Positions 689 through 56,359 of a stretch of DNA of 64,000 nt are shown here, one piece after another (the first letter of the stretch is position 1; each line of letters opens with the position of its first letter). Position numbers and translations under genes: made by a program. The notes under the pieces were generated by a model. It was not told where the DNA came from and did not search any database. It saw only the letters and a program-made list of their open reading frames with translations. Source of the DNA: Anthoceros angustus (taxonomy: Eukaryota > Plantae > Anthocerotophyta); assembly GCA_010909165.1 (NCBI GenBank), contig MU008162.1:2167601-2231600 (forward strand), in the 5' to 3' direction.

Positions 689-843
689 TATGGCCCTGAC
701 CATCCCAAGTGGCTAGGCCCCTTCTCCGCCAACACTCCATCATACGAAGGAGAATTCCGCTGGCTACGACTGCGGCCGGGCCTATCCGCGACCGAGACAT
801 TCGCCAAGAACAGGGAGTTGGAGGTGATCCATGCTGGGCTATG
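689..843 (+). pseudogene. LHCB: Captured fragment of chlorophyll a/b-binding protein (major LHCII, Lhcb1/Lhcb2/LhcbM type)
   Basis: The frame from 689 reads [23 protein letters not shown]...[19 protein letters not shown], and TGGGCTATG (WAM) follows at 835-843 in a shifted frame. This matches the LHCII motif [56 protein letters not shown]. There is no transit peptide and no C-terminal helices. Confidence 0.93.
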
Positions 844-1255
844 TCGTGGAGTGCCGTGCGTGCGGGGGACACTAAATCGGTCCGAAATGCCCAAATCCGA
901 TCGGAGCTTGGAACATCTCGGTTCTTCCTCATCTTCGATTTGAGGAATCCTCGTAGGACGTTGACTTGAGACACCGAGATAGGACTTGCTCGGCACATTT
1001 GTAACTATTTATTTTACAAAGCACAGAATTTATTGAAAAAAAAGGTGGCTATATATGTGGTATATGGGTTCACTAATTATCGTATTGAAAAGTAATCGTG
1101 TGATTACCTATAGATGTTATGCACTCTTCAAGGCTATAATTCCAACCTTTCATAGAGCTTATTTGGTTGATCGGAATCATAATAATCCAAGATAAAGTCT
1201 TATTCTTTATCTTTCATTTGACTTCTGAGGACAAAAGCCAATCCAAGACAAAGTT

Positions 1256-1817
1256 ATGGGTCTTTTGAACTGCTTTGTAATCTTCCACTTGACTTACAAG
1301 AACAAATTATTATGAAGTATATGAGTAATGTCGAGCATGGCAAAATTGGAAGTATGTTCCAAAACTCACACTTTGCACATTAACATATGGGGATTTATGA
1401 ATGGAGATCCAAATACGTAAATCATGGCTTATCAAATATTATTATCACTTCCACATCTTGTGACATCCATTGTTCTCTATTGCCTCTATGAAGTCAACTT
1501 TAGACCCTACCATGATGAGATGCTAATTAGTAATAAAGTTTTAGTTGACGAAGATAGAGTTAAAGATATGGTTGAAAGTCTCAATGAGCTTTATGTATGG
1601 TCAAATCTCCCAAAAGTTCAAGCCATCATCACCTTTGAAAAGGAAGTCACATATGAAGAATTTGTGTATCCACTGTAGAATAATGTTTCGTGGTCACATA
1701 CAAGCAAGCATGCATGGAAAGGGACGATATATGCCCATTATAACTCTTGGACTAGGAATAATGAAATCTTGAATCAACAATGCCCCCCATGAAACCATTC
1801 CACAAGCTATGCCATGA
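1256..1817 (+). pseudogene. Copy of unknown ~187-aa ORF (interrupted as assembled)
   Basis: Core MAYQILL...EEFVYP at 1424-1678 with flanks homologous to 19303-19864. Confidence 0.45.
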
Positions 1818-1951
1818 AACCTGTATACTTCCTTGCCTCTCTAGCTGCTGGCTCTAGAGTCCCGAGTCCTGGCAGTGTGCGTGTCGTGGCCATGGATACA
1901 ACAAATAAGTCCTATATATTTCGTAGCAATATTAATTCCAGGTGCTTGCTA

Positions 1952-2165
1952 TGGAGAAGACACTTCATTCAGTCAACATGTGGAGAAGAGCCTCGATTCC
2001 AAATGCTTGCTATGGAGAAGACACTTCTCGATTCCAGTATGTGGAGAAGAGCCTCGATTCCACTGATTCGTTGTGGAGAAGGATCCGATTCCATTCAGGA
2101 GAAGACACTTCGACTCTAGCGTCGTGGAAGACACTTCGACTCTAGTTGCTCGTGGAGAAGGCGCT
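1952..2165. repeat. Sub-repeat B: 5-7 x TGGAGAAGACACTTCGA(TTCC/CTCTAG), ~27-40-bp period (every unit)
   Basis: Directly visible; core dyad GAAG-ACA-CTTC. Confidence 0.95.
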
Positions 2166-2186
2166 TCTTGATAGAGTGCATGCCAT

Positions 2187-2310
2187 GGCCATGGATACGA
2201 TAAATTAGTCCATTAACGTCTAGATCCGATCAAGCTTGGAGCCTCTACCGTGGCCATGGATACGACAAATTAGTCAAGTAATGTCTAGATGCGATCAAAG
2301 CTTGGAGCCT
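2187..2310. repeat. Sub-repeat C: ~63-bp tandem pair TGGCCATGGATACG..AAATTAGTC..CTAGAT.CGATC.AAGCTTGGAGCCTCT
   Basis: Directly visible; a third partial copy is at 1887-1911. Confidence 0.9.
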
Positions 2311-2564
2311 CTTGGGTTCTTCCGGCCATTCGATCTAAGTAATCAGTAAGGACATTCTCTTGAGAGACCAGTAAGGACGTGTTGGGCACGTTTGTAACTT
2401 TTATTTTATAAAGCCTTAAATTTATTAAAAACAAAAGAGGATATGTTGTAAATCGATAAGATAATTATTGCAATCGATGTGCATCCTTGTAGAATAATGC
2501 TTTATAGTCACGTATAAGCAAGATCGTAAAGGGACCATAAAAATATTTCAAGGTGAGGGCAATG

Positions 2565-2770
2565 GAGTCACCATCCAATAGTTTAAGCAAAGAATTTCAA
2601 GGCGTAACCACGAGTTACCATCAAATGGTCTAAGATAGGCGTAAGATTGGCTCAAGATAGCGAGATATTTCTAAGGCGAGGACGATGAAGTCACCATCAA
2701 ATGTTTTAAGCAAAGAATTTCAAGGTAACACAGAGATAGTTACCATTAAATGATGGCTCAAGATAGTGAG
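2565..2770. repeat. Sub-repeat D: ~120-bp tandem pair AGTCACCATC..TTTAAGCAAAGAATTTCAAGG..AGTTACCAT..GGCTCAAGATAG
   Basis: Directly visible in every unit. Confidence 0.9.
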
Positions 2771-2934
2771 ACTTTAACGGAAGATCTTCCCACTTGACAG
2801 TCTCCCAATGCTACGTAGTGGCTCAATCTTGGGAAGAAAATATTAAAACCAATACCTCAACCTTTTGATACGTAATAGAGAAGAAGAAAAGACACTTACT
2901 TAACCCTTAAGACACAATCCTACGGTCTCAAGCG

Positions 2935-3061
2935 ATTGAGAAAATGTATTACTTCATTTACCCATTCGTGGTATTATGTGACTTCATGGCTCCCGCCTCC
3001 AAAAATTTGAGAAACGTATTACTTCATTTACCCATTGGTGGCATCATTGGACTTCATGGAG
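2935..3061. repeat. ~70-bp tandem pair TTGAGAAA..GTATTACTTCATTTACCCATT..GACTTCATGG
   Basis: Directly visible in every unit. Confidence 0.85.
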
Positions 3062-3519
3062 TGACATCTCTCAGTTCCCATCTTTTGTCTTTGCTTCTCA
3101 TATCATTTTCCTTTTTGTAAATAGATAAGAATCATTTTACTTTGCTTTTGATACCACTTTCGCTACAAAGCTTGGAAGAGGACATAGTAATATTAAAATA
3201 TTCAATGAAACATATAGAATCAAGAAATTTATGTCTAATGCATCAACATCTATTCATCGGGCATAAGTCTAGTATAGTCTTCATTGACCGGTGGTCCTTG
3301 GGTCCTATTTTAGATCGGCACTTAACGACTATCGTCCAAAAAGAGGCGGATCACCGACGTGGTCAAAAAAATGCCTTGCTCAGTATCATATTTGTGAATG
3401 GCAGGTTAGTAGTACATATGGGAAGGTGAAAGTGAAGTTATCTACTAAAAGCTTTTCCTTTTGCTCCATCCTTATGGATAAACATGTCATGTATGAAGAT
3501 CATCGAAGCTTATCTTGTT

Positions 3520-3625
3520 AGAGAATTTGAGACTTTATATGTAGATATTTCAAAGTGTAGAGAATTTGGAGACTTTACATAGATATTTCAAAGTGCAAAG
3601 AATTTGGTATTGATATTTCAAAGTG
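3520..3625. repeat. Sub-repeat E: 3 x (AGAATTTGG..)GATATTTCAAAGTG
   Basis: Directly visible. Confidence 0.9.
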
Positions 3626-3802
3626 TACATCAAGTCCCGTGGAAGTTTAATGTTTGATATGGAGTAGGCCGTAGGGCACTAACAATCAAGTGGCGCATAA
3701 GGGCATGATTTATAATCCAGGGCCATGGAGCTAGGAATGGATGCCACCCAGTACTGATCCCCAAGGACGCTTTCAAGACTGTGGAGTTCCAAGAACCAAG
3801 TG

Positions 3803-3898
3803 CATGCCACTCCTTGAAGGGAGGACCACAAGAAGTATATCACCCATGAAGTGCATGCCACTCCTTGAAGGAGGACCACAAGAAGTATATCACCCATG
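3803..3898. repeat. Sub-repeat F: 2 x ~51-bp CATGCCACTCCTTGAAGG(G)AGGACCACAAGAAGTATATCACCCATG
   Basis: Directly visible; contains the palindrome CTCCTT-G-AAGGAG. Confidence 0.93.
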
Positions 3899-4859
3899 TC
3901 AAAGCGTTGACCCCTAATTGACGGGCTTTTTCTAGGATCTTTTAATCGAATAAATCTGAAAATTACCCTACTAAGCTACACATATTTTCACTTCTGATTA
4001 TTGAGGACCTTGTTGAATTCTTGAGTTATTGCGTGCTTAACTTGCCTCGATCATGTCTCGTATCGGGAGTGCACTCCTCCTTCTTGAGTCCATGCACACA
4101 TGACAACTATGCCACTAAGGTGTCCTCAAGCCCGCAATGAGTGTTCATCCTCGCTTATGGAGGAGGCCTTCCGATCCTTGACTGCAAACCTAATAGTACG
4201 TTCTAAGAAATTCAAAGGCCCGAACGACTAGCGAGTTGGAAGGGCTAAACTACATCTTTATTTGGCGATCCCGAACGCCTTAGGGCAACGGAATCCCATC
4301 CCACAACATTGCGGCTTCACTCGTTGTATCCTAGTTCGCAGGTAACAGTGGCCACCATACACATGGGTGTTTCAAATTGGCATCGTGGAGTAGTGGAACC
4401 GACTGTCATGAGGATTTATGAAGGTGTCCGCGTATGGCAACATCAAGAAAATCCAAGGTCACCTGCGCAAAATGTCACCAGAAAATCCAAGGTCACCAGC
4501 GAAAATCCAAGGTCACCTTAGCTGACAAAATCCAAGGTCACCTTTGCTGCAACACAAGCTCAAATTGGGCTTCAAGGGTCTTACTAGCCATTGGCAAGGT
4601 CATCCAAACCATCGCCGCAACAAAACCAACAAGTTTCTACCGCACCCAAGTTAAGATTTTGAGTAAAATAGGTTGGAGACCCATGAACAATGTTTCTTTT
4701 GCCTCTTCACAAATTAGATGCAATTGATAATTTGGGGCTGCAACTACTAGTATCTCCACGCCCACCCCATTGTGTTCATAATGGAAAACCGGAGAAGTGT
4801 TCAAAATTCTTCCGGATCTTGCTAATGGCATCAGTAGAACTCCTTCTTGCTGCATCCGG

Positions 4860-5016
4860 TATGGCCCGACCATCCCAAGTGGCTAGGCCCTTCTCCGCCA
4901 ACACTCCATCATACGGCGGGAGAATTCTGCGACGATCGCGATGCCGGGCCTATCCGCGACCCCGAGACATTCGCCAAGAACAGGGAGTTGGAGGTGATCC
5001 ATGCTGGGCTATGCTG
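4860..5016 (+). pseudogene. LHCB: Lhcb fragment, array copy
   Basis: [35 protein letters not shown], partly visible in ORFs 4847..5044 and 4690..5112. Confidence 0.92.
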
Positions 5017-5425
5017 TGGAGTGACAGGGTTGCGTGGACACTAAATCGTCCAAATGCCCAAATCCGATCGGAGCTTGGAACATCTCTCGTTCTTCCTCAT
5101 CTTTCGATTTGAGGAATCCTCGTAGGACGTTGACTTGAGACACTGAGATAGGACTTGCTCGGCACATTTGTAACTATTTATTTTACAAAGCGCAGAGTTT
5201 ATTGAAAAAGAAGGAGGCTATATATGTGGTATATGGGTTCGCTAATTATCGTATTCAAAAGTAATCGTGTGATTACCTATAGATGTTATGCACTCTTCAA
5301 GGCTATAATTCCAACCTTTCATAGAGCTTATTTGGTTGATCGCGAATCATAATAATCCAAGATAAAGTCTTATTCTTTATCTTTCATTTGACTTACGAGG
5401 ACAAAAGCCAATCCAAGACAAAGTT

Positions 5426-5981
5426 ATGGGTCTTTTTGAACTGCTTGTAATCTTCCACTTGACTTACAAGAACAAATTATTATGAAGTATATGAGTAATG
5501 TCAAGCATGGCAAAATTGGAAGTATGTTCCAAAACTCACACTTTGCACATTAACATATGGGGATTTATGAATGGAGATCCAAATACGTAAATCATGGCTT
5601 ATCAAATATTATTATCACTTCCACATCTTGTGACATCCATTGTTCTCTATTGCCTCTATGAAGTCAACTTTAGACCCTACCATGATGAGATGCTAATTAG
5701 TAATAAAGTTTTAGTTGACGAAGATAGAGTCAAAGATATGGTTGAAAGTCTCAATGAGCTTTATGTATGGTCAAATCTCCCAAAAGTTCAAGACATTATC
5801 ACCTTTGAAAAGGAAGTCACATATGAAGAATTTGTGTATCCACGTAGAATAATGTTTCGTGGTCACATACACAAGCATGCATGGAAAGGGACGATATATG
5901 CCCATTATAACTCTTGGACTAGGAATAATGAAATCTTGAATCGAATGCCCCCATGAAACCATTCCACAAGCTATGCCATGA
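5426..5981 (+). pseudogene. Copy of unknown ORF
   Basis: Core ORF 5594..5956. Confidence 0.45.
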
Positions 5982-8900
5982 AACCTGTATACCTCCTTGC
6001 CTCTCTAGCTGCTGGCTCTAGAGTCCCGAGTCCTGGCAGTGTGCGTGTCGTGGCCATGGATACAACAAATAAGTCCTATATATTTCGTAGCAATATTAAT
6101 TCCAGGTGCTTGCTATGGAGAAGACACTTCCTGATTCCAGCTGCTCGCTGTATGTGGAGAAGACAGTTCCTGATTCCAGCTGTTCGTTGTGGAGAAGACA
6201 GATCCGATTCCAAATTGCGTTGTGGAGAAGACACTTCGACTCTAGTTGCTCAGTGGAGAAGACACTTCGACTCTAGCATTTCGTGGAGAAGACACTTCGA
6301 CTCTAGTTGCTCAGTGGAGAAGACGCTTCTTGATAGAGTGCATGCCATGGCCATGGATACGATAAATTAGTCCATTAACGCTCTAGATCCGATCAAGCTT
6401 GGAGCCCTCTACCGTGGCCATGGATCGACAAATTAGTCAAGTAATGTCTAGATGCGATCAAAGCTTGGAGCCTCTTGGGTTCTTCCGCCATTCGATCTAA
6501 GTAATGCTGTAAGGACATTCTCTTGAGAGACCGAGTAAGGACGTGTTGGGCACGTTTGTAACTTTTATTTTATAAAGCCTTAAATTTATTAAAAACAAAA
6601 GAGGATATGTTGTAAATCGATAAGATAATTATTGCAATCGATGTGCATCCTTGTAGAATAATGCTTTATAGTCACGTATAAGCAAGATCGTAAAGGGACC
6701 ATAAAAATATTTCAAGGTGAGGGCAATGGAGTCACCATCCAATAGTTTAAGCAAAGAATTTCAAGGCGTAACCACGAGTTACCATCAAATGGTCTAAGAT
6801 AGGCGTAAGATTGGCTCAAGATAGCGAGATATTTCTAAGGCGAGGACGATGAAGTCACCATCAAATGTTTTAAGCAAAGAATTTCAAGGCGTAACAGAGA
6901 TAGTTACCATTAAATGATGGCTCAAGATAGTGAGACTTTAACGGAAGATCTTCCCACTTGAGTCTCCCAATGCTACGTAGTGGCTCAATGGGAAGAAAAT
7001 ATTAAAACCAATACCTCAACCTTTTGATACGTAACGAGGAGAAGAAGAAGAAAAGACACTTACTTAACCCTTAAGACACAATCCCACGTAGCTTGCCTCC
7101 AAGCCATTGAGAAAATGTATTACTTCATTTACCCATTCGTGGTATTATGTGACTTCATGGCTCCGCCTCCAAAAATTTGAGAAACGACATTTCATTTACC
7201 CATTGGTGGCATCATTGGACTTCATGGAGTGACATCTCACTGTTCCCATCTTTTGTCTTTGCTTCTCATATCATTTTCCTTTTTGTAAATAGATAAGAAT
7301 CATTTTACTTTGCTTTTGATACCACTTTCGCTACAAAGCTTGGAAGAGGACATAGTAATATTAAAATATTCAATGAAACATATAGAATCAAGAAATTTAT
7401 GTCTAATGCATCAACATCTATTCATCGGGCATAAGTCTAGTATAGTCCTGCTCATTGACCAGGTGGTCCTTGGGTCCTATTTTAGATCGGCACTTAACGA
7501 GACTATCCGTCCCAAAAAGAGGCAGGACTGGCCCGACGGGTCAAAAAATGCCTTGCTTCAGATCATATTTGTGAATGGCACGGTGAGTAGTACATATGGG
7601 AAGGTGAAAGTGAAGTTATCTACTAAAAGCTTTTCCTTTTGCTCCATCCTTATGGATAAACATGTCATGTATGAAGATCATCAAGCTTATCTTGTTAGAG
7701 AATTTGGAGACTTTATATGTAGATATTTCAAAGTGTAGAGAATTTGGAGACTTTACATAGATATTTCAAAGTGCAAAGAATTTGGTATTGATATTTCAAA
7801 GTGTACATCAAGTCCCACCGGAAGTTTAATGTTTGATATGGAGTAGGCCCGTAGGGCACTAACAATCAGGCATAAGGGCATGATTTATAATCCACAGGCC
7901 ATGGAGCTAGGAATGGATGCCACCCACAGAATCGATCCGTCCCAAGGACGCTTTCAAGACTGTGGAGTTCCGTGAACCAAGTCGCATGCCACTCCTTGAA
8001 GGAGGACCACAAGAAGTATATCACCCATGAAGTCGCATGCCACTCCTTGAAGGGAGGACCACAAGAAGTATATCACCCATGTCAAAGCGTTGACCCCTAA
8101 TTGACGGGCTTTTTCTAGGATCTTTTAATCGAATAAATCTGAAAATTACCCTACTAAGCTACACATATTTTCACTGATTATTGAGGACCTCGTTGAATTC
8201 TTGAGTTATTGGCTTAACTTGCCCCGATCATGTCTCAGACGGGAGTGCACTCCTCCTTCTTGAGTCCATGCACATGACAACTATGCCACTATGACCGCCC
8301 TCAAGCCCGCAATGAGTGTTCATCCTCGCCTCGCTTATGGAGGAGGCCTTCCCGATCCTTGACCGCAAACCTAATAGTACGTTCTAAGAAATTCCCAAAG
8401 GCCCGAACGACTAGCGAGTTGGAAGGGCTAAACTACATGCTGTCTATTTGGCAGCCCGCTAACGCCTTAGGGCAACGGAATCCCATCCCACAACATTGCG
8501 GCTTCACTGCTTTGTATCCTAGTTCGCAGTAACGACAGGCCACCATACACATGGGTGTTTCAAATTGGCATCGAGTAGTGGAACCGACCGCCATGAGGAT
8601 TTATGAAGGTGTCCGCGTATGGCAACATCAAGAAAATCCAAGGTCACCTTGGCAAAATCCAAGGTCACCTTGGTCAAAGAAGAAAATCCAAGGTCACCTC
8701 AGCAAAGAAGAAAATCCAAGGTCACCTTTGCAGCAGAAAAATCCAAGGTCACCTTTGCTGCAACACAAGCTCAAATTGGGCTTCAAGGGTCTTACTAGCC
8801 ATTGGCAAGGTCATCCAAACCATCGCCGCAACAAAACCAACAAGTTTCTACCGCACCCAAGTTAAGATTTTGAGCGAAAATAGGTTGGAGACCCAAGGAA

Positions 8901-9077
8901 CAATGTTTCTTTTGCCTCTTCACAAATTAGATGCAATTGATAATTTGGGGCTGCAGCTTACTAGTATCTCCACGCCCACCCACTGTGTGTTCATAAGTCG
9001 GAGTGAAACCGGAGAAGTGTTCAAAATTCTTCCGGATCTTGCTAATCGCAATGAGAACTCCTTCTTGCGCATCCGTG

Positions 9078-9231
9078 TATGGCCTCGACCATCCCCAAGT
9101 GGCTAGGCCCCTTCTCCGCCAACACTCCATCATACGAAGGAGAATTCTCGACTACGATCGATGCCGGGCCTATCCGCGGACCGAGACATTCGCCAAGAAC
9201 AGGAGTTGAGGTGATCCATATCATGGCTATG
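9078..9231 (+). pseudogene. LHCB: Lhcb fragment, array copy
   Basis: [18 protein letters not shown] in ORF 9079..9402; ETFAKN..EVIH follows after indels. Confidence 0.9.
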
Positions 9232-9652
9232 CCGTGGAGTGACAGCAGTGCATGCCATGGCCATGGATACTACAAATCGGTCCAAATGCCCAACCGATCG
9301 GAGCTTGGAACATCTCGGTTCTTCCTCATCTTCGATTTGAGGAATCCTCGTGAGGACGTTGACTTGAGACACCGAGATAGGACTTGCTCGGCACATTTGT
9401 AACTATTTATTTTACAAAGCGCAGAGTTTATCGAAAAAGAGAGGCTATATATGTGGTATATGGGTTCGCTAATTATCGTATTCAAAAGTAATCGTGTGAT
9501 TACCTATAGATGTTATGCACTCTTCAAGGCTATAATTCCAACCTTTCATAGAGCTTATTTGGTTGATCGCGAATCATAATAATCCAAGATAAAGTCTTAT
9601 TCTTTATCTTTCATTTGACTTACGAGGACAAAAGCCAATCCAAGACAAAGTT

Positions 9653-10212
9653 ATGGGTCTTTTTGAATGCTTTGTAATCTTCCACTTGACTTACAAGAAC
9701 AAATTATTATGAAGTATATGAGTAATGTCAAGCATGGCAAAATTGGAAGTATGTTCCAAAACTCACACTTTGCACATTAACATATGGGGATTTATGAATG
9801 GAGATCCAAATACGTAAATCATGGCTTATCAAATATTATTATCACTTCCACATCTTGTGACATCCATTGTTCTCTATTGCCTCTATGAAGTCAACTTTAG
9901 ACCCTACCATGATGAGATGCTAATTAGTAATAAAGTTTTAGTTGACGAAGATAGAGTCAAAGATATGGTTGAAAGTCTCAATGAGCTTTATGTATGGTCA
10001 AATCTCCCAAAAGTTCAAGACATCATCACCTTTGAAAAGGAAGTCACATATGAAGAATTTGTGTATCCACCGTAGAATAATGTTTCGTGGTCACATACAA
10101 GCAAGCATGCATGGAAAGGGACGATATATGCCCATTATAACTCTTGGACTAGGAATAATGAAATCTTGAATCACAATGCCCCCATGAAACCATTCCACAA
10201 GCTATGCCATGA
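9653..10212 (+). pseudogene. Copy of unknown ORF
   Basis: Core ORF 9821..10075. Confidence 0.45.
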
Positions 10213-13174: not shown

Positions 13175-13233
13175 TATGGCCTGACCATCCCCAAGTGGCT
13201 AGGCCCTTCTCCGCCAACACTCCATCATACGAA
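13175..13233 (+). pseudogene. LHCB: Lhcb fragment truncated at an internal junction
   Basis: [17 protein letters not shown], then a jump to another part of the unit at ATCATACGAAG. Confidence 0.85.
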
Positions 13234-14603
13234 GCTTATCTTGTTAGAGAATTTGGAGACTTTATATGTAGATATTTCAAAGTGTAGAGAATTTGGAGAC
13301 TTTACATAGATATTTCAAAGTGCAAAGAATTTGGTATTGATATTTCAAAGTGTACATCAAGTCCCGCACCGAAGTTTAATGTTTGATATGGAGTAGGCGT
13401 AGGGCACCAACAATGGCGCAGACAAGGGCATGATTTATAATCCATGTGGCCATGGAGCTAGGAATGGATGCCACCCACCCGAGCATCGATCCGTCCCAAG
13501 GGCGCTTTCAAGACTGTGGAGTTCCAGTGAACCAAGTGCATGCCACTCCTTGAAGGAGGACCACAAGAAGTATATCACCCATGAAGTGCATGCCACTGAA
13601 GGGAGGACCACAAGAAGTATATCACCCATGTCAAAGCGTTGACCCCTAATTGACGGGCTTTTTCTAGGATCTTTTAATCGAATAAATCTGAAAATTACCC
13701 TACTAAGCTACACATATTTTCACTTACGATTATTGAGGACCTCGTTGAATTCTTGAGTTATTGCGTGCTTAACTTGCCTCGATCATGTCTCAGACGGGAG
13801 TGCACTCCTCCCTTCTTGAGTCCATGCACACATGACAACTATGCCACTATGATCCTCCTCAAGCCCGCAATGAGTGTTCATCCTCCGCCTCGCTTATGGA
13901 GGAGGCCTTCCCGATCCTTGACCGCAAACCTATTAGTACGTTCTAAGAAATTCTAAAGGCCCAACGACCAGCGAGTTGGAAGGGCTAAACCACATGCCGC
14001 CTATTTGGCGTGATCCGCGAACGCCTTAGGGCAACGGAATCCCATCCCACAACATTGCGGCTTCACTCGCTTTGTATCCTAGTTCGCAGTAGACAGTGGC
14101 CACCGTTACACATGGGTGTTTCAAATTGGCATCGGGAGTAGTGGAACCGATCGCCATGAGGATTTATGAAGGTGTCCGTATGGCAACATCAAGAAAATCC
14201 AAGGTCACTCGCGGAAGAAAATCCAAGGTCACCTTGGTCGCAAAAGAAAATCCAAGGTCACCTTGGTCACAGCAAAGAAAATCCAAGGTCACCTTTGCTG
14301 CAACACAAGCTCAAATTGGGCTTCAAGGGTCTTACTAGCCATTGGCAAGGTCATCCAAACCACGCCGCAACAAAACCAACAAGTTTCTACCGCACCCAAG
14401 TTAAGATTTTGAGCGAAAATAGGTTGGAGACCCAAGGAACAATGTTTCTTTTGCCTCTTCACAAATTAGATGCAATTGATAATTTGGGGCTGCAGCTTAC
14501 TAGTATCTCCACGCCCAATTGTGTTCATAAGTCGGAGTGGCGGAGAAGTGTTCAAAATTCTTCCGGATCTTGCTAATCGCGTAGAACTCCTTCTGCATCC
14601 GTG

Positions 14604-40077: not shown

Positions 40078-40250
40078 AACCATACTTCCTTGCCTCTTCA
40101 CAAATTAGATGCAATTGATAATTTGGGGCTGCAGCTTACTAGTATCTCCACGCCCATTTCACCGTTGTGTTCATAAGCTAGAGGAACTGGATAAGTGTTC
40201 AAAATTCTTCCGGATCTCTGCAATCAGAGAACTCCTTCTTGCTGCATCCG

Positions 40251-46300: not shown

Positions 46301-46395
46301 CCGTTGTGTTCATAAGCTAGAGTGAAAAGCGGATAAGTGTTCAAAATTCTTCCGGATCTTGCTAACTGCACCGTAGAACTCCTTCTGCATCCGTG

Positions 46396-46550
46396 TATGG
46401 CCCCGACCATCCCAAGTGGCTAGGCCCCTTCTCCGCCAACACTCCATCATACCGAAGGAGAATTTCACATCACGATGGCTGCCTATCCATGACCCCGAGA
46501 CATTCGCCAAGAATGTGGAGTTGAGGTGATCCATGATCATGGCTATGCTG
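46396..46550 (+). pseudogene. LHCB: Lhcb fragment, array copy
   Basis: TATGGCCCCGACCATCCCAAGTGGCTAGGCCCCTTCTCC translates to [13 protein letters not shown]. Confidence 0.9.
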
Positions 46551-46961
46551 TGGAGTGATAAAAGCGTGCTGCATGTGACACTACAAATCGGTCCAAATGC
46601 CCAACCGATCGGAGCTTGGAACATCTCGGTTCTTCCTCATCTTCGATTTGAGGAATCTCGAGACGTTGACTTGAGACACCGAGATAGGACTTGCTCGGCA
46701 CATTTGTAACTATTTATTTTACAAAGCGCAGAGTTTATCAAAAAAGAGAGGCTATATATGTGGTATATGGGTTCGCTAATTATCGTATTCAAAAGTAATC
46801 GTGTGATTACCTCTAGATGTTCTCGCACTCTTCAAGGCTATAATTCCAACCTTTCATAGAGCTTATTTGGTTGATCGGCGAATCATAATAATCCAAGATA
46901 AAGTCTTATTCTTTATCTTTCATTTGACTTACGAGGACAAAAGCCAATCCAAGACAAAGTT

Positions 46962-47522
46962 ATGGGTCTTTTGAATGCTTTGTAATCTTCCACTTGACTT
47001 ACAAGAACAAATTATTATGAAGTATATGAGTAATGTCAAGCATGGCAAAATTGGAAGTATGTTCCAAAAACTCACACTTTGCACATTAACATATGGGGAT
47101 TTATGAATGGAGATCCAAATACGTAAATCATGGCTTATCAAATATTATTATCACTTCCACATCTTGTGACATCCATTGTTCTCTATTGCCTCTATGAAGT
47201 CAACTTTAGACCCTACCATGATGAGATGCTAATTAGTAATAAAGTTTTAGTTGACGAAGATAGAGTCAAAGATATGGTTGAAAGTCTCAATGAGCTTTAT
47301 GTATGGTCAAATCTCCCAAAAGTTCAAGACATTATCACCTTTGAAAAGGAAGTCACATATGAAGAATTTGTGTATCCAATCAGAGAATAATGTTTCGTGG
47401 TCACATACAAGCAAGCATGCATGGAAAGGGACGATATATGCCCATTATAACTCTTGGACTAGGAATAATGAAATCTTGAATCGCAATGCCCCCATGAAAC
47501 CATTCCACAAGCTATGCCATGA
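46962..47522 (+). pseudogene. Copy of unknown ORF
   Basis: Core ORF 47130..47390. Confidence 0.45.
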
Positions 47523-50500
47523 AACTGTAGATACTTCCTTGCCTCTAGTCTGCCTCTAGAGTCCCGAGTCCCGCAGCAGCGGTCGCGTGGCCATGGATAC
47601 AACAAATAAGTCCTATATATTCAGTAGCAACATTAATTCCAGCTGCTGCTATGGAGAAGACACTTCGATTCCAGCACAGTATGTGGAGAAGATGTCATTC
47701 CAAATTCGCTGTGGAGAAGACAGATCCGATTCCAAATACTCAGTGGAGAAGACACTTCACTCTAGTCATGTGGAGAAGACACTTCGACTCTAGTTGCTCG
47801 TGGAGAAGACGCTTTTGATAGAGTGCATGCCATGGCCATGGATACGATAAATTAGTCCATTAACGTCTAGATCCGATCAAGCTTGGAGCCCCTCTACGTG
47901 GCCATGGATACGACAAATTAGTCAAGTAATGTCTAGATGCGATCAAAGCTTGGAGCCTCTTGGGTTCTTCCGGCCATTCAATCTAAGTAATGTGTAAGGA
48001 CATTCTCTTGAGAGATTATAAGGACGTGTTGGGCACGTTGTAACTTTTATTTTATAAAGCCTTAAATTTATTAAAAACAAAAGAGGATATGTTGTAAATC
48101 GATAAGATAATTATTGCAATCGATGTGCATCCTTGTAGAATAATGCTTTATCGTCACGTATAAGCAAGATCGAAAGGGACCATAAAAATATTTCCAAGGT
48201 GAGGCAATGGAGTCACCATCCAATAGTTTAAGCAAAGAATTTCAAGGTAATCCACAGAAGTTACCATCAAATGGTCTAAGATAGGCGGAAGATTGGCTCA
48301 AGATAGCGTAGATATTTCTAAAGAGGACGATGAAGTCACCATCAAATGTTTTAAGCAAAGAATTTCAAGGCGTAACTGCAGAGATAGTTACCATTAAATG
48401 ATGGCTCAAGATAGTGAGACTTTAACGGAAGATCTTCCCACTTGTGGGCCTCCCAATGCTACGAGTGGCTCAATCTTTGGGAAGAAAATATTAAAACCAA
48501 TACCTCAACCTTTTGATACGAACGAGAGAAGAAGAAAAGACACTTACTTAACCCTTAAGACACAATCCTACGTAGCTTCGCCTGGGCGATTGAGAAAATG
48601 TATTACTTCATTTACCCATTCGTGGTATTATGTGACTTCATGGCTCCCGCCTCCAAAAATTTGAGAAACGTATTACTTCATTTACCCATTGGTGGCATCG
48701 TTGGACTTCATGGAGTGACATCTCTCACCGTTCATCTTTTGTCTTTGCTTCTCATATCATTTTCCTTTTTGTAAATAGATAAGAATCATTTTACTTTGCT
48801 TTTGATACCACTTTCGCTACAAAGCTTGGAAGAGGACATAGTAATATTAAAATATTCAATGAAACATATAGAATCAAGAAATTTATGTCTAATGCATCAA
48901 CATCTATTCATCGGGCATAAGTCTAGTATAGTGCTCATTGACCAAAGGTGGTCCTTGGGTCCTATTTTAGATCGGCACTTAATCTAGACCGTCCCCCTCA
49001 AAAGAGGCGGATCGGGTTCGGGACGTGGTCAAAAATGCCTTGTTTCAGATGTATCATATTTGTGAATGGCATCGTGAGTAGTACATATGGGAAGGTGAAA
49101 GTGAAGTTATCTACTAAAAGCTTTTCCTTTGCTCCATCCTTATGGATAAACATGTCATGTATGAAGATCATCTGAAGCTTATCTTGTTAGAGAATTTGGA
49201 GACTTTATATGTATATTTCAAAGTGTAGAGAATTTGGAGACTTTATACAGATATTTCAAAGTGAAAAGAATTTGGTATTGATATTTCAAAGTGTACATCA
49301 AGTCCCTGACCGGAAGTTTAATGTTTGATATGGAGTAGGCCCGTAGGGCACTAACAATCGGGCATAAGGGCATGATTTATAATCCACGAGGGCCATGGAG
49401 CTAGGAATGGATGCCACCCACCGAAAATCGATCCGTCCCAAGGCGCCAAGACTGGGTGGAGTTCCAAAGTGAACCAAGTGCATGCCACTCCTTGAAGGAG
49501 GACCACAAGAAGTATATCACCCATGAAGTCTCGTATGCCACTCCTTGAAGGGAGGACCACAAGAAGTATATCACCCATGTCAAAGCGTTGACCCCTAATT
49601 GACGGGCTTTTCTAGGATCTTTTGTCGAATAAATCTGAAAATTACCCTACTAAGCTACACATATTTTCACTGATTATTGAGGACCTCGTTGAATTCTTGA
49701 GTGGCGCGCTTAACTTGCCTCGATCATGTCTCGACGGGAGTGCACTCCTCCTTCTTGAGTCCATGCACACATGACAACTATGCCACTATGACTGGCCCCT
49801 CAAGCCCGCAATGAGTGTTCATCCTCGCCGCTTATGGAGGAGGCCTTCCAGATCCTTGACCGCAAAACCTAATAGTACGTTCTAAGAAATTCCCAAAGGC
49901 TGAACGACTAAGCGAGTTGGAAGGGCTAAACTACATCGCCTATTTGGCCAGCCCGCGAACGCTTTAGGGCAACAATCCCATCCCACAACATTGCGGCTTC
50001 ACTCGTTTGTATCCTAGTTCGCAGTAACGGTAGGCCACCATGGGTGTTTCAAATTGGCATCGGAGTAGTGGAACCGACCGCCATGAGGATTTATGAAGGT
50101 GTCCGTATGGCAACATCAGCAAAATCCAAGGTCACCTTGGCAGCGCAAAATCCAAGGTCGGTCTAGCAGAATCCAAGGTCACCTCAGCAAAGAATAAATC
50201 CAAGGTCACCTTGCAGCGAAAAAATCCAAGGTCACCTTGCTGCAACACAAGCTCAAATTGGGCTTCAAGGGTCTTACTAGCCATTGGCAAGGTCATCCAA
50301 ACCATCGCCGCAACAAAACCAACAAGTTTCTACACCCAAGTTAAGATTTTGAGTAAAATAGGTTGGAGACCCAAGGAACAATGTTTCTTTTGCCTCTTCA
50401 CAAATTAGATGCAATTGATAATTTGGGGCTGCAGCTTACTAGTATCTCCGCCCCAATTGTTGTGTTCATAAGCTAGAGTGAAAACTGGATAAGTGTTCAA

Positions 50501-50548
50501 AATTCTTCCGGATCTTGCTAACTGCACCTAGAACTCCTTCGCCATCTG

Positions 50549-50697
50549 TATGGCCCGACCATCCCCATGGCTAGGCCCTTCTCCGCCAACACTCCATCAT
50601 ACGAAGGAGAATTCCAAGGCGACGACTGACACTGGCCTATCCATGGACCCCAGACATTCGCCAAGAACAGGGAGTTGGAGGTGATCCATGCACAGGC
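50549..50697 (+). pseudogene. LHCB: Lhcb fragment, array copy
   Basis: [13 protein letters not shown] is intact. Confidence 0.88.
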
Positions 50698-51113
50698 CGT
50701 GGAGTGACAGGTGCGTGTTGGTGGCAGGGGACACTACAAATCGGTCCGTAAATGCCCAAATCCGATCGGAGCTTGGAACATCTCTCGGTTCTTCCTCATC
50801 TTCGATTTGAGGAATCCTGTAGGACGTTGACTTGAGACACCGAGATAGGACTTGCTCGGCACATTTGTAACTATTTATTTTACTGTAGCGAGTTTATCGA
50901 AAAAAGAGGCTATATATGTGGTATATGGGTTCAAATTATCGTATTCAAAAGTAATCGTGTGATTACCTCTAGATGTTGCACTCTTCAGGCTATAATTCCA
51001 ACCTTTCATAGAGCTTATTTGGTTGATCGGCAATCATAATAATCCAAGATAAAGTCTTATTCTTTATCTTTCATTTGACTTTCTGAGGACAAAAGCCAAT
51101 CCAAGACAAAGTT

Positions 51114-51669
51114 ATGGGTCTTTTTGAATCTGTTGTAATCTTCCACTTGACTTACAAGAACAAATTATTATGAAGTATATGAGTAATGTCACATGGCAAA
51201 ATTGGAAGTATGTTCCAAAACTCACACTTTGCACATTAACATATGGGGATTTATGAATGGAGATCCAAATACTGAAATCATGGCTTATCAAATATTATTA
51301 TCACTTCCACATCTTGTGACATCCATTGTTCTCTATTGCCTCTATGAAGTCAACTTTAGACCCTACCATGATGAGATGCTAATTAGTAATAAAGTTTTAG
51401 TTGTGAAGATAGAGTCAAAGATATGGTTGAAAGTCTCAATGAGCTTTATGTATGGTCAAATCTCCCAAAAGTTCAAGACATTATCACCTTTGAAAAGGAA
51501 GTCACATATGAAGAATTTGTGTATCCACCGTAGAATAATGTTTCGTGGTCACATACAAGCAAGCATGCATGGAAAGGGATATATGCCCATTATAACTCTT
51601 GGACTAGGAATAATGAAATCTTGAATCAAGAATGCCCCCCATGAAACCATTCCACAAGCTATGCCATGA
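51114..51669 (+). pseudogene. Copy of unknown ORF lacking the first internal stop
   Basis: ORF 51193..51624 reads ...WGFMNGDPNTEIMAYQ through the site that is TAA in most copies. Confidence 0.45.
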
Positions 51670-54600
51670 AACTCAGATACTTCCTTGCCTCTCTAGTCAC
51701 GGCGGCTCTAGAGTCCCGAGTCTGGCGCGGCGTGGTCGTGGCCATGGATACAACAAATAAGTCCTATATATTTCGTAGCAATATTAATTCCATTTGCTAT
51801 GGAGAGACACTTCCGATTCCACCGTCATTGTATGTGGAGAAGATGGCAGTTCTCGATTCCAAATTGTCACAGTTGGAGAAGATCGATTCCACATCACTGT
51901 GAGAAGACACTTCGACTCTAGCGCTTGTGGAGAAGACACTTCGACTCTGGTTGCTCAGGAGAAGACGCTTCTTGATAGAGTGCGCCATGGCCATGGATCG
52001 ATAAATTAGTCCATTAACGTCAGATCCGATCGAAGCTTGGAGCCCTCTACCGGCCATGGATACGACAAATTAGTCAAGTAATGTCTGATGCATCAAAGCT
52101 TGGAGCCTCTTGGGTTCTTCCGCCATTCAATCTAAGTAATCTGTAAGGACATTCTCTTGAGAGAGAGTAAGGACGGTTGGGCACGCTTTGTAACTTTTAT
52201 TTTATAAAGCCTTAAATTTATTAAAACAAAAGAGGATATGTTGTAAATCGATAAGATAATTATTGCAATCGATGTGCATCCTTGTAGAATAATGTTTCGT
52301 GGTCACATACAAGCAAGCATGCATGGAAAGGGACGATATATGCCCATTATAACTCTTGGACTAGGAATAATGAAATCTTGAATCAAGAATGCCCCCCATG
52401 AAACCATTCCACAAGCTATGCCATGAAACTCAGATACTTCCTTGCCTCTCTAGTCACGGCGGCTCTAGAGTCCCGAGTCTGGCGCGGCGTGGTCGTGGCC
52501 ATGGATACAACAAATAAGTCCTATATATTTCGTAGCAATATTAATTCCATTTGCTATGGAGAGACACTTCCGATTCCACCGTCATTGTATGTGGAGAAGA
52601 TGGCAGTTCTCGATTCCAAATTGTCACAGTTGGAGAAGATCGATTCCACATCACTGTGAGAAGACACTTCGACTCTAGCGCTTGTGGAGAAGACACTTCG
52701 ACTCTGGTTGCTCAGGAGAAGACGCTTCTTGATAGAGTGCGCCATGGCCATGGATCGATAAATTAGTCCATTAACGTCAGATCCGATCGAAGCTTGGAGC
52801 CCTCTACCGGCCATGGATACGACAAATTAGTCAAGTAATGTCTGATGCATCAAAGCTTGGAGCCTCTTGGGTTCTTCCGCCATTCAATCTAAGTAATCTG
52901 TAAGGACATTCTCTTGAGAGAGAGTAAGGACGGTTGGGCACGCTTTGTAACTTTTATTTTATAAAGCCTTAAATTTATTAAAACAAAAGAGGATATGTTG
53001 TAAATCGATAAGATAATTATTGCAATCGATGTGCATCCTTGTAGAATAATGTTTCGTGGTCACATACAAGCAAGCATGCATGGAAAGGGACGATATATGC
53101 CCATTATAACTCTTGGACTAGGAATAATGAAATCTTGAATCAAGAATGCCCCCCATGAAACCATTCCACAAGCTATGCCATGAAACCTCAGATACTTCCT
53201 TGCCTCTCTAGGCTGGCTCTAGAGTCCCGAGTCAGCAGGTGTCGTAATGCCATGGATACAACAAATAAGTCCTATATATTTCAGAGTATTAATTCGGTAC
53301 CTTGCTATGGAGAAGACACTTCCGATTCCATTTCAGATGTGGAGAAGATACCGATTCCACATTCGTTGTGGAGAAGAGATCCTCGATTCTACCATCGCAC
53401 CGTGGAGAAGACACTCGACTCTAGCGCCGTGGAGAAGACACTTCCGACTCTAGTTGCTCTCAAGAAGACGCTTCTTGATAGAGCGCCATGGCCATGGATA
53501 ATCGATAAATTAGTCCATTGCGTCTAGATCCGATCGAAGCTTGGGCCCTGCGGGCATGGATGCGACAAATTAGTCAAGTAATGTCTAGATGCGATCAAAG
53601 CTTGGAGCCTCTTGGGTTCTTCGGCCATTCAATCTAAGTAATCTTAAGGACATTCTCTTGAGAGGCAAAGTAAGGACGTGTTAAGTGTTGTAACTTTTAT
53701 TTTATAAAGCCTTAAATTTATTAAAACAAAAGAGGATATGTTGTAAATCGATAAGATAATTACAAATCGATGTGCATCCTTATAGAATAATGCTTTATAG
53801 TCACGTATAAGCAAGATCGTAAAGGGACCATAAAAATATTTCAAGGTGAGGGCAATGAGTCACCATCCAATAGTTTAAGCAAAGAATTTCAAGGCAACCA
53901 CGAAGTTACCATCAAATGGTCTAAGATAGGCAGAAGATTGGCTCAAGATAGCGAGATATTTCTAAAGCGAGGGCGATGAAGTCACCATCAAATGTTTTAA
54001 GCAAAGAATTTCAAAGCGCGAGAGATAATTACCATTAAATGATGGCTCAAGATAGTGAGACTTTAACGGAAGATCTTCCACTTGAGCCTCCCAATGCTGT
54101 GGTGGCTCAATCTTTGGGAAGAAAATATTAAAACCAATACCTCAACCTTTTGATCGTAACGTAGGAGAAGAAGAAGACACTTACTAACCCTTAAGACACA
54201 ATCTCATCGTAGCTTCAGTCTCAAGATTGAGAAAATGTATTACTTCATTTACCCATTCGGGTATTATGTGACTTCATGGCTCCTGCCTCAAAAATTTGAG
54301 AAGCATTACTTCATTTACCCATTGGTGGCATCGTTGGACTTCATGGAGTGACATCTCTCACTGCTCCATCTTTTGTCTTTGCTTCTCATATCATTTTTTT
54401 TGTAAATAGATAAGAATCATTTTACTTTGCTTTTGATACCACTTCGCTACAAAGCTTGGAAGAGGACATAGTAATATTAAAATATTCAATGAAACATATA
54501 GAATCAAGAAATTTATGTCTAATGCATCAACATCTATTCATCGGGGCATAAGTCTAGTATAGTCGCTCATTGACGGTGTGGTCCTTGGGTCTATTTTAGA

Positions 54601-56200
54601 TCGTACTTAACGAGACCGTCAGTCGAAAAAGAGGGCAGGATCGGGCGGACGTGGTCAAAAAATGCCTTGCTTCAGATTATATTTGTGAATGGCTTGGTGA
54701 GTAGTACATATGGGAAGGTGAAAGTGAAGTTATCTACTAAAAGCTTTTCCTTTGCTCCATCCTTATGGATAAACATGTCATGTATGAAGATCATAATGAA
54801 GCTTATCTTGTTAGAGAATTTGGAGACTTTATATGTAGATATTTCAAAGTGTAGAGAATTTGGAGACTTTACATAGATATTTCAAAGTGCAAAGAATTTG
54901 GTATTGATATTTCAAAGTGTACATCAAGTCCCTTGCTGGAAGTTTAATGTTTGATATGGAGTAGGCCCGTAGGGCACTAACAACTCATGCGCATAAGGGC
55001 ATGATTTATAATCCAGGCCATGGAGCTAGGAATGGATGCCACCACTGCATCGATCCGTCCCAAGGGCGCTTTCAAGGCTGGAGTTCGATGAACTAAGTAC
55101 GCATGCCACTCCTTGAAGGGAGGACCACAAGAAGTATATCACCCATGAAGTCTCGCATGCCACTCCTTGAAGGGAGGACCACAAGAAGTATATCACCCAT
55201 GTGCCGCGTTGACCCCTAATTGACTGCTTTTCTAGGATCTTTTAATCGAATAAATCTGAAAATTACCCTACTAAGCTACACATATTTTCACTTCGATTAT
55301 TGAGGACCTCGTTGAATTCTTGAGTTATTGCGTTTAACTTTCCACGATCATGTCTCGTATCAGAGTGCACTCCTCCTTCTTGAGTCCATGCACACATGAC
55401 AACTATGCCACTATGACCTCCTCAAGCCCGCAATGAGTGTTCATCCTGCCGCTTATGGAGGAGGCCTTCCGATCCTTGACCGCAAACCTAATAGTACGTT
55501 CTAAGAAATTCCCAAAGGCCCCGAACGACTAGCGAGTTGGAAGGGCTAAACTACATCCCTATTTGGCCAGTCCGCCGAACGCCTTAGGGCAAGCGGAATC
55601 CCATCCCACAATGCGGCTTCACTGCGTTTGTATCCTAGTTCGGGTAACGGTGTGGCCACAGGTTACTACATGGGTGTTTCAAATTGGCATCGGGAGTAGT
55701 GGAACCGACGCCATGAGGATTTATGAAGGTGTCCGCGTGGCAACATCAGCAAAATCAAGGTCACCTTATCGCGGAGAAAAATCCAAGGTCACCTTGGTGA
55801 AGCAAAATCCAAGGTCACCTCAAGCAACAAAAATCCAAGGTCACCTTATGGGCTGCAAGACAAATCCAAGGTCACCTTTGCTGCAACACAAGCTCAAATT
55901 GGGCTTCAAGGGTCTTACTAGCCATTGGCAAGGTCATCCAAACCAGCAACAAAACCAACAAGTTTCTACACACCCAAGTTAAGATTTTGAGCGAGAAAAT
56001 AGGTTGGAGACCCAAGGAACAATGTTTCTTTTGCCTCTTCACAAATTAGATGCAATTGATAATTTGGGGCTGCAGCTTACTAGTATCTCCACGCCCAAAT
56101 TACTGTTGTGTTCATAAGCTAGAGTGAAAACTTGGATAAGTGTTCAAAATTCTTCGGATCTTGCTAATGCAATCAGAGAACTCCTTCTTGCTGCATCCTG

Positions 56201-56359
56201 TATGGCCTCGACCATCCCAAGTGGCTAGGCCCCTTCTCCGCCTAACACTCCATCATACGAAGGGAGAATTCTCACAGAGACGGCGACGGCCTATCCATGG
56301 ACCCCGAGACATTCGCCAAGAACAGGAGTTGGAGGTGATCCATGCTCGCGGCTATGCTG
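56201..56359 (+). pseudogene. LHCB: Lhcb fragment, array copy
   Basis: [23 protein letters not shown]. Confidence 0.9.

What the first reader, a model, noticed from the sequence alone, without database searches (positions are those of the whole stretch)
689..56359. A photosynthetic antenna gene fragment (Lhcb) amplified 15-fold inside a 4.15-kb macrosatellite
Seen: each unit carries ~155 bp encoding [48 protein letters not shown] (14 full copies plus 1 truncated). Known: this is the N-terminal region and start of the first transmembrane helix of major LHCII proteins (Lhcb1/2, LhcbM), which are highly expressed plant nuclear genes. Host-gene fragment capture is typical of Helitrons and Pack-type TIR elements. 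Inference: the unit is a chimeric non-autonomous element amplified in tandem. As a methylated multicopy repeat it could produce siRNAs matching the real Lhcb family, and it will inflate Lhcb gene counts.
Basis: partly seen in the sequence, partly recalled or inferred. Interest (0 to 1): 0.8.

Follow-up and report, generated by a model that had tools for sequence, protein, structure and literature searches.

The report
Lhcb gene scrap in plant macrosatellite
A 4.2-kb DNA unit repeated head to tail in a bryophyte-like plant genome carries a dead 155-base scrap of a light-harvesting antenna gene; it is a passenger copied along with the repeat, and most apparent damage in the copies looks like sequencing noise at methylated DNA.

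Summary
A head-to-tail array of a ~4.17-kb unit fills window 1-59274 and resumes at 61327-62303. It carries 15 same-strand copies (14 full, 1 cut to 61 bp) of a ~155-bp piece. This piece matches only the N-terminal stretch YGPD...WAM(L) of major LHCII proteins (best PDB hit Arabidopsis Lhcb2, E 1.6e-12). No other part of an Lhcb gene is present, and no other gene or transposon signature was found in the unit.

Pfam PF00504 does not hit any copy. No copy is in frame across the part that the model covers.

The 8-12% "divergence" between units is not ordinary decay. It sits in small patches at CG and CAG/CTG sites and in homopolymers. Indels outnumber substitutions, and almost every copy reads differently. 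Outside the patches only 0.5% of columns vary. I read this as long-read basecalling noise on CG/CHG-methylated DNA. The units are then near-identical, and the frame state of the scrap cannot be decided.

All copies share the same boundaries, unit position and R-to-H change. That indicates one capture followed by array amplification.

Helitron, TIR and LTR hallmarks were not found, and the siRNA idea is untested. Earlier notes of this scan list other gene-bearing macrosatellites elsewhere in this genome.

The parts
1..59274 (+). Tandem array of the ~4.17-kb unit. It enters the window mid-unit. It holds 7 canonical units and 8 units with internal deletions or duplications.
   Evidence: unit 1 aligned to the window; spacings
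689..843 (+). Lhcb-derived piece, copy 1 (reference copy; [32 protein letters not shown] in one frame)
4860..5013 (+). Lhcb-derived piece, copy 2
   Evidence: (89% identity)
9078..9219 (+). Lhcb-derived piece, copy 3
13175..13234 (+). Lhcb-derived piece, copy 4. It is cut after ~61 bp by a 2.75-kb internal deletion of the unit (unit position ~62 joined to 2811).
14604..14759 (+). Lhcb-derived piece, copy 5
18748..18893 (+). Lhcb-derived piece, copy 6
24980..25136 (+). Lhcb-derived piece, copy 7 (one of two copies that keep PGDY)
29121..29282 (+). Lhcb-derived piece, copy 8
33848..33995 (+). Lhcb-derived piece, copy 9 (in a 959-bp unit remnant)
34807..34960 (+). Lhcb-derived piece, copy 10
38958..39114 (+). 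Lhcb-derived piece, copy 11 (in a 1.3-kb unit remnant)
40251..40404 (+). Lhcb-derived piece, copy 12
46396..46547 (+). Lhcb-derived piece, copy 13
50549..50691 (+). Lhcb-derived piece, copy 14
56201..56356 (+). Lhcb-derived piece, copy 15
59275..61270 (.). About 2 kb of unrelated C-rich DNA (GC 51%) interrupting the last unit at unit position ~3110. Its limits are approximate.
61327..62303 (+). Continuation of the last unit (unit positions 3114-4019) at only 81% identity
62304..64000 (.). GC-rich (61%) foreign sequence that cuts the unit. It is either the array boundary or a large insertion. Its ORFs have no Pfam hit.

Best explanation
What it is: a real, young or strongly homogenised nuclear macrosatellite of a land plant. 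Earlier notes of this scan say it is probably a hornwort or another bryophyte. Its ~4.17-kb, otherwise non-coding unit once picked up a ~155-175-bp piece of a major LHCII gene, from about (PW)YGPD to WAM(L), and was then amplified head to tail.

How the copies arose: the 15 Lhcb pieces are products of one capture event, multiplied and reshuffled by unequal exchange or replication slippage. They are not 15 captures and not genes. The piece lacks a start codon, the transit peptide, all three membrane helices and the pigment ligands, so it cannot make an antenna protein. It is a passenger.

What the divergence is: the array is probably heavily methylated at CG and CHG. Most of the apparent 8-12% divergence and all the copy-specific frameshifts are long-read basecalling or polishing noise at methylated cytosines and homopolymers. 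True unit-to-unit identity is probably above 99%.

Shown: the array, the copy number, the LHCII origin, the limits of homology, and the clumping of variation at CG/CWG sites and homopolymers.

Inferred: methylation, the noise reading, the single capture, and the amplification mechanism.
For: Array and copies.

LHCII origin: E 1.6e-12, Lhcb2 best; all 38 hits carry PF00504.

Homology limited to YGPD..WAM(L): tblastn of 38 partial LHCII proteins, which reach up to 100 residues further downstream, hits only that segment of each unit.

Single event: all copies have the same unit position, the same boundaries, and CAT (His) in an invariant column where LHCII has Arg, a CpG-type change.

Nothing else coding; no Rfam or tRNA hits.

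Noise reading, from 7 aligned full units:
- 3430 of 4429 columns are invariant, in runs averaging 14.3 columns against 4.4 expected if variation were scattered.
- 86-91% of CAG/CTG and 63% of CG occurrences lie in variable columns, against 9-16% for AT-rich words.
- 76 of 80 patches of 4 or more columns contain CG or CWG, and most have 5-7 different readings among 7 units.
- 35 of 38 single-base indels are homopolymer length changes.
- Single-column differences are 37 indels against 17 substitutions.
- Outside the patches only 17 of ~3447 columns vary (0.5%): 12 transitions, 6 of them CpG-type.
- CWG observed/expected is 0.39 against 1.02 for the GWC control.

Internal control: every conserved LHCII motif is readable in some copies but in shifting frames.

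Background: published nanopore hornwort assemblies used R9/Albacore reads polished with Pilon, and their tandem-repeat scan stopped at a 2-kb period (PMC8075897). Methylation-related nanopore errors are documented (PMC12506013, listed).
Against: - No raw reads, methylation calls or short-read data could be examined, so both methylation and the noise reading are indirect.
- The sequencing platform of this assembly is unknown to me.
- Systematic basecalling errors might be expected to be the same in every copy rather than different.
- Some variation is real and structured. CCAT instead of CCGC occurs in five right-hand copies, so part of the CG-site variation may be true deamination.
- Structural variants of units could be misassemblies, so the copy number of 15 is only as good as the assembly.
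- The source of the piece (the host's own Lhcb gene) was not seen.
Confidence: 0.72

Rival explanations
1. The unit is a chimeric non-autonomous transposon (Helitron or Pack-type TIR element) that captured the Lhcb fragment and was then amplified in tandem, for example by rolling-circle read-through.
For: Capture of short host-gene fragments with genomic context is typical of these elements (established knowledge). The detectable homology begins at, or within two codons of, the position where Lhcb2-type genes carry their only intron (L001...TG|intron|G TAC GGA). One copy reads pyrimidine tract + CAG|G TAT there. That fits capture of genomic DNA rather than cDNA.
Against: No hairpin+CTRR|TC junction in three units on either strand. 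Only one weak inverted pair, 21 nt and internal. No Pfam transposase or helicase in 20 tested unit ORFs. No dispersed monomers could be searched for. GC-rich hairpins might be masked by the noise, so the negative result is not decisive.
Confidence: 0.12
2. The array is old and truly ~10% diverged. The patches are biological hypermutation at methylated CG/CHG sites, and the Lhcb pieces are independently decayed pseudogene fragments.
For: Variation is tied to methylation contexts. CpG and CWG are depleted. Half of the clean transitions are CpG-type.
Against: Deamination gives C-to-T transitions, not the indel-rich, copy-unique garbles seen. A background of 0.5% variable columns next to 60-90% altered CG/CWG sites is not a known mutational pattern. 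Homopolymer-length indels (35 of 38) are a sequencing signature.
Confidence: 0.08
3. The array is a regulatory small-RNA source. Methylated direct repeats feed 24-nt (or 21-22-nt) siRNAs that act in trans on the real LHCII gene family.
For: It is multicopy and probably methylated. It contains perfectly conserved stretches of about 40 nt of Lhcb-derived sequence. Direct tandem repeats can attract RNA-directed DNA methylation (established knowledge).
Against: All 15 copies are in direct orientation, so no hairpin precursor exists. The piece is 4% of the unit. The host Lhcb sequence is unknown, so identity over 21-24 nt is untested. Silencing of an essential, highly expressed family would be costly. 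Other macrosatellites in this genome carry unrelated gene pieces (scan notes), which fits passengers better than targeted regulators.
Confidence: 0.05
4. The Lhcb-derived piece is an exon of a chimeric, expressed multicopy gene in the unit. One candidate partner is the downstream ORF MAYQILLSL.., which another first-stage note called F-box-like.
For: The ORF is readable in at least 8 units with nearly identical sequence. Possible splice-like signals flank the piece.
Against: The ORF has no homologue and no Pfam hit, and its proposed F-box N-terminus has none either. Its conservation is explained by near-identity of all AT-rich stretches. In-frame stops separate the parts.
Confidence: 0.03

Closest known systems
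Gene-bearing macrosatellites such as human D4Z4 (3.3-kb unit carrying DUX4; PMC7564105) and other large tandem repeats with embedded genes (PMC4063668)
   Same: A multi-kb unit repeated head to tail, probably methylated and repressed, with a gene-derived sequence repeated once per unit.
   Different: D4Z4 carries a complete ORF. Here there is only about 55 codons of one gene end, with no start codon and no complete domain.
Y(V)-chromosome-specific multi-kb repeats of the liverwort Marchantia polymorpha that embed amplified gene copies (Okada et al. 2001; Ishizaki et al. 2002; from my own knowledge, not checked here)
   Same: Bryophyte lineage, with kilobase-scale repeats that co-amplify host gene copies.
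   Different: Those copies are intact, male-expressed genes. The chromosomal location of this array is unknown and its cargo is a fragment.
Other macrosatellites noted by this scan in the same genome (ELF1, TFIIB, ALY, kinase, TGS1 units of 2.5-7 kb; s1-697437, s1-270530, s1-253370, s1-697427, s1-688637)
   Same: Same genome, same head-to-tail architecture, the same suspicion of sequencing noise at methylated sites, and a host-gene-derived insert per unit.
   Different: Those units carry whole or nearly whole (often intronless) gene copies. This one carries a short partial-exon scrap. It is not the 4.2-kb ALY unit, since no SLDDLIK-type motif occurs in any frame.
Pack-MULE / Helitron gene-fragment capture (established knowledge)
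   Same: A short fragment of a host gene lies inside non-coding repeated DNA, possibly taken from genomic rather than cDNA sequence.
   Different: No element termini, target-site duplications or transposon proteins were found. Copies are tandem, not dispersed.

Membership tests
LHC superfamily gene (Pfam PF00504, Chloroa_b-bind) | Significant match to the PF00504 profile | tested here: not met
   0 hits at E<=1 for six stop-free translations of six copies. An intact natural fragment of the same extent scores 60 bits, so the failure is due to frame breaks.
LHC superfamily gene (Pfam PF00504, Chloroa_b-bind) | Sequence derived from a major LHCII protein (N-terminal YGPDRxKxLGPFS...[13 protein letters not shown] block) | tested here: met
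   phmmer against PDB gives E 1.6e-12, with Lhcb2 best. All 38 word-search hits carry PF00504.
LHC superfamily gene (Pfam PF00504, Chloroa_b-bind) | Complete three-helix coding region with start codon and transit peptide | tested here: not met
   tblastn finds nothing beyond WAM(L) anywhere in the window. No upstream transit-peptide match was found.
Macrosatellite (tandem repeat with unit over 1 kb) | Head-to-tail units of constant length aligning over their full length | tested here: met
   Seven units of 4097-4218 bp align end to end. The array covers at least 59 kb.
Helitron (including tandem Helitron arrays) | 3' hairpin followed by CTRR, 5' TC, and Rep/helicase in autonomous copies | tested here: not met
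   No hairpin (stem of 6 or more) + CTRR|TC site in three units on either strand. No helicase or Rep domain. Noise in GC-rich patches limits the power of this test.
Pack-MULE / TIR DNA transposon | Terminal inverted repeats flanked by target-site duplications | tested here: not met
   The only inverted pair is a 21-nt, 81% match with arms 283 nt apart, inside the unit.
LTR retrotransposon tandem array | LTR-sized direct repeats, tRNA primer-binding site, gag/pol | tested here: not met
   No long direct repeats within the unit. The tRNA-Met PBS pattern gives 1 match against 4.5 expected by chance. No gag or pol Pfam hit.
siRNA-generating silencer locus | Small RNAs from the locus with 21 nt or more of identity to target genes | not testable with these tools
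   No small-RNA data and no host Lhcb gene sequence were available. All copies are in direct orientation.

The most novel reading that the evidence does not exclude
This array is one member of a genome-wide set of methylated macrosatellites in a bryophyte, each having trapped a host gene or gene piece. This scan's notes list 36 macrosatellite findings in this genome, with cargo including ELF1, TFIIB, ALY, a kinase and TGS1. Such a set might mark a special compartment, such as a sex or accessory chromosome or a centromere substitute in a lineage reported to lack classical centromeric satellites. Within it, the Lhcb-bearing array might feed small RNAs that touch the LHCII family.
Probability: 0.07. 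Interest if true: 0.6.

Novelty: new member of a known kind. Interest (0 to 1): 0.3.

Why it matters
There are three practical points.

1. Homology-based annotation will report up to 15 spurious Lhcb "genes" or pseudogenes here. They should be masked as one repeat-borne fragment.

2. The piece gives an internal ruler for assembly quality. A very conserved peptide is readable only as a mosaic across copies, and differences pile up at CG/CWG sites and homopolymers. Frameshifts and stops in repeated, methylated parts of this assembly therefore should not be taken as biology.

3. It adds one more case to a striking list of gene-carrying multi-kb tandem arrays in this genome. Published hornwort tandem-repeat scans limited to 2-kb periods (PMC8075897) would have missed such arrays. 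That genome-level pattern is the part worth following up, not this scrap.

Tried and rejected
- **Pfam on the Lhcb piece:** six in-frame pieces gave no PF00504 hit. The reason is explained.
- **Consensus of the piece:** a majority consensus of 14 copies stays frameshifted, because the patches are noise in every copy, so the true frame cannot be recovered.
- **Unit ORF MAYQILLSL.. (130 aa):** the word search found no relatives. Pfam gave only sub-threshold chance hits. The proposed F-box-like N-terminus (note s1-686045) has no Pfam hit and is separated from the ORF by a stop.
- **RNA genes:** Rfam and tRNA scans found nothing.
- **Transposon hallmarks:** the Helitron junction scan, TIR/LTR search and PBS search found nothing above chance.
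- **Is this the 4.2-kb ALY macrosatellite noted elsewhere?** No ALY-type motif occurs in any frame.
- **Intron-boundary idea:** the 5' limit coincides with the Lhcb2 intron site seen in L001. However, six copies read CCGTG-TATGG, which could equally be P-W-Y-G of an uninterrupted coding sequence. The boundary is therefore uncertain by two codons, and I do not claim an exon-exact capture.
- **Donor assignment:** Lhcb2 scores best (50.3 bits against about 42-47 for the next-best LHCII chains), but the margin is small. Bryophyte LHCII does not map cleanly onto Lhcb1/2, so I call it only "major LHCII type".
- **P0001's Logan contig:** it could not be fetched.
- **Big representative search:** not used. 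The protein's identity was not open, and 50% clustering would collapse LHCII.
- **The search of earlier findings by sequence:** blank.


Full report
**1. Observation**

The stretch 689-843 reads, in one frame, [23 protein letters not shown]...[14 protein letters not shown]. blastn of these 155 bases against the window finds 15 copies, all on the + strand, at 82-95% identity. One of them (13175-13234) is cut to 61 bp.

Aligning the whole interval 689-4859 to the window shows a head-to-tail array of a ~4.17-kb unit. It covers 1-59274 and, after about 2 kb of unrelated DNA, 61327-62303. Seven units are canonical (4097-4218 bp). The irregular spacings come from units with internal deletions (for example unit position ~62 joined to 2811 at 13.2 kb) or internal duplications (for example at 22.1, 23.9, 31.9, 40.9-42.6 and 52.3-53.0 kb).

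**2. Is it Lhcb?**

- phmmer of window:689-841 against all PDB chains returns 72 light-harvesting chains. The best are Arabidopsis Lhcb2.1/2.2 (E 1.6e-12, 50 bits), followed by other LHCII chains (Lhcb1, Lhcb2, Lhcb3 and LhcbM types).
- The word search with the 96-aa stop-free stretch 653-940 returns 38 proteins. All carry PF00504; those with source names are called chlorophyll a-b binding protein or are unnamed/hypothetical.
- tblastn of these 38 partial LHCII proteins against the window hits only the same ~155-bp segment of each unit. That segment corresponds to YGPD through WAM(L). Nothing matches the downstream GALGCVFPELL...GEAVWFKAG region or any other part.
- Pfam itself gives no hit for six copies. 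PF00504 begins only at ...PSYLTGEF, so the well-preserved YGPD..SANT block is outside the model. The region inside the model is out of frame in every copy. A natural intact fragment of the same extent (P0002) scores 60 bits.

**3. Rest of the unit**

- Twenty further ORFs and stop-free stretches from the unit give no Pfam family above cut-off.
- The recurrent ORF MAYQILLSL.. has no relative in the 5.8-billion-protein word search.
- There are no Rfam families or tRNAs.
- The unit is full of short internal repeats with periods of about 25-34, 50-53 and 61-66 nt. It has no terminal inverted repeats and no LTR-sized repeats. It has no Helitron-type hairpin+CTRR|TC junction and no tRNA-Met primer site above chance.

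The transposon reading therefore has no positive support here.

**4. Nature of the differences between units**

This is the main new point. In an alignment of the seven full units:

- 3430 of 4429 columns are invariant. They form runs averaging 14.3 columns, against 4.4 expected if variation were scattered. Variable columns are 57% G+C against 39% for invariant ones.
- The variable columns form 176 patches.
- 91% of CAG, 86% of CTG and 63% of CG occurrences (74-80% for GCG, CCG, CGG and CGC) fall in variable columns, against 9-16% for AT-rich words.
- 76 of 80 patches of four or more columns contain CG or CWG in at least one copy. Most show 5-7 different readings among the 7 units. 35 of 38 single-base indels are homopolymer length changes.
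- Single-column differences are 37 indels against 17 substitutions.
- Outside the patches only 17 of about 3447 columns vary (0.5%). Twelve are transitions, six of them CpG-type.
- CWG is at 0.39 of expectation in the assembled array, while the control GWC is at 1.02.

Real decay by cytosine deamination gives transitions shared by related copies. It does not give copy-unique indel garbles beside perfectly identical AT-rich stretches.

The pattern fits long-read (nanopore-type) basecalling and polishing errors at methylated CG/CHG sites and homopolymers, which short-read polishing cannot repair in multicopy DNA. Published nanopore hornwort assemblies used R9/Albacore reads with Racon and Pilon (PMC8075897). 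Methylation-related nanopore errors are documented (PMC12506013). Other agents of this scan reached the same reading on other arrays of this genome (s1-270530, s1-697427).

The Lhcb piece itself serves as a control. Each conserved LHCII motif is readable in some copies, but in shifting frames: [17 protein letters not shown] and EVIH each in 14 of 15 copies, DPETFAKN in 9/15, ELEVIH in 8/15, WAM in 5/15 and PGDY in 2/15. A majority consensus does not restore a frame.

I conclude that the units are probably more than 99% identical, that the array is probably methylated, and that the intact-or-broken state of the piece cannot be decided from this assembly.

**5. History**

All copies share the same place in the unit, the same limits, and His (CAT) in an invariant column where LHCII proteins have Arg. 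This is a CpG-type change that must predate amplification. That means one capture, then amplification. Some real substructure exists: five of the copies from 33848 rightwards read CCAT where the others read CCGC.

The 5' limit lies at or within two codons of the site where Lhcb2-type genes have their single intron. This is seen directly in the ENA contig L001, which reads ...ATA TG|gtaaa...gacag|G TAC GGA. Copy 1 reads a pyrimidine tract plus CAG|G TAT there. However, six copies read CCGTG-TATGG, which could be Pro-Trp-Tyr-Gly of an uninterrupted coding sequence. I leave open whether genomic DNA with an intron end or coding sequence alone was captured.

**6. Mechanism and function**

The most likely account has four steps:

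1. A short piece of a major LHCII gene was inserted, as filler DNA or through a small duplication or an unidentified mobile element, into a non-coding segment.
2. That segment then expanded by unequal exchange or replication slippage.
3. Ongoing exchange keeps the units nearly identical and creates the partial and duplicated units.
4. The array is silenced by CG/CHG methylation.

The piece cannot encode an antenna protein. A trans-acting small-RNA role is possible in principle but has no support here. All copies are direct, the piece is 4% of the unit, and the host target sequence is unknown.

**7. Context and novelty**

Macrosatellites that carry gene-derived sequence are known (D4Z4/DUX4, PMC7564105). 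Liverwort sex-chromosome repeats with embedded genes are another example, cited from my own knowledge. This scan has already noted many gene-bearing macrosatellites on other pieces of this genome. This one is a further, less complete member and is not the 4.2-kb ALY unit. I rate it a new member of a known kind, of modest interest by itself. The genome-wide pattern and the assembly-quality lesson are the useful outcomes.

**8. Array edge**

The last unit is interrupted at 59275 by about 2 kb of C-rich DNA. It then continues at 81% identity and is cut at 62303 by 61%-GC sequence without Pfam hits. Whether the array goes on beyond the window is unknown.

Noticed in passing
window 1424-1678, 5594-5956, 15337-15729, 35539-35886, 41356-41703, 51193-51624, 56906-57289 (and 19303-19864): A recurrent ORF (MAYQILLSLPHLV...) is nearly identical in at least 8 units. 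It was flagged by another first-stage note as an F-box-like multicopy gene. It has no homologue in the word search and no Pfam hit, and in-frame stops flank it. Its conservation is explained by near-identity of all AT-rich stretches of the unit.
   Followed up: partly
window 59275-61270: About 2 kb of C-rich (GC skew -0.13 to -0.25), CA/CT-microsatellite-bearing DNA is inserted into the last unit at unit position ~3110. Its ORFs have no Pfam hit and no terminal repeats were found. Its nature is unknown.
   Followed up: partly
window 62304-64000: A 61%-GC, A-over-T-skewed sequence begins abruptly inside a unit (unit position 4019). It has long ORFs on both strands but no Pfam hit. It may be the edge of a large insertion or the array boundary.
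   Followed up: partly
window 61327-62303: The terminal partial unit is only 81% identical to unit 1, against 88-94% for the others. It may be an edge unit that escaped homogenisation, or it may simply be noisier because it is more GC-rich.
   Followed up: no
within each unit, e.g. window 1867-2300, 3798-3898, 4446-4550: The unit contains several internal mini-repeats: a 61-66-nt period around TGGCCATGGATACGAC.., a 50-53-nt period around ATGCCACTCCTTGAAGG.., and a 25-34-nt period around AAAATCCAAGGTCACC. Breakpoints of the unit variants may lie in these.
   Followed up: no
Lhcb pieces at 33848, 34807, 46396, 50549, 56201: Five right-hand copies share CCAT where the other copies read CCGC (a double CpG-type change). 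This is real substructure within the array, despite the noise.
   Followed up: partly
proteins P0004, P0007, P0014, P0016, P0031, P0035: Plant chlorophyll a/b-binding protein fragments are deposited under bacterial names (Escherichia coli, Salmonella, Nitratireductor, Enterobacter) on contigs of 334-407 bp. This is evidently plant DNA contamination in bacterial assemblies.
   Followed up: no
L001 480-520: The ENA metagenome contig carrying an Lhcb2-type gene has a frame break right after WAML. As a result its called protein ends at the same point as the piece in this window. That is a coincidence of gene calling, not an exon boundary.
   Followed up: partly
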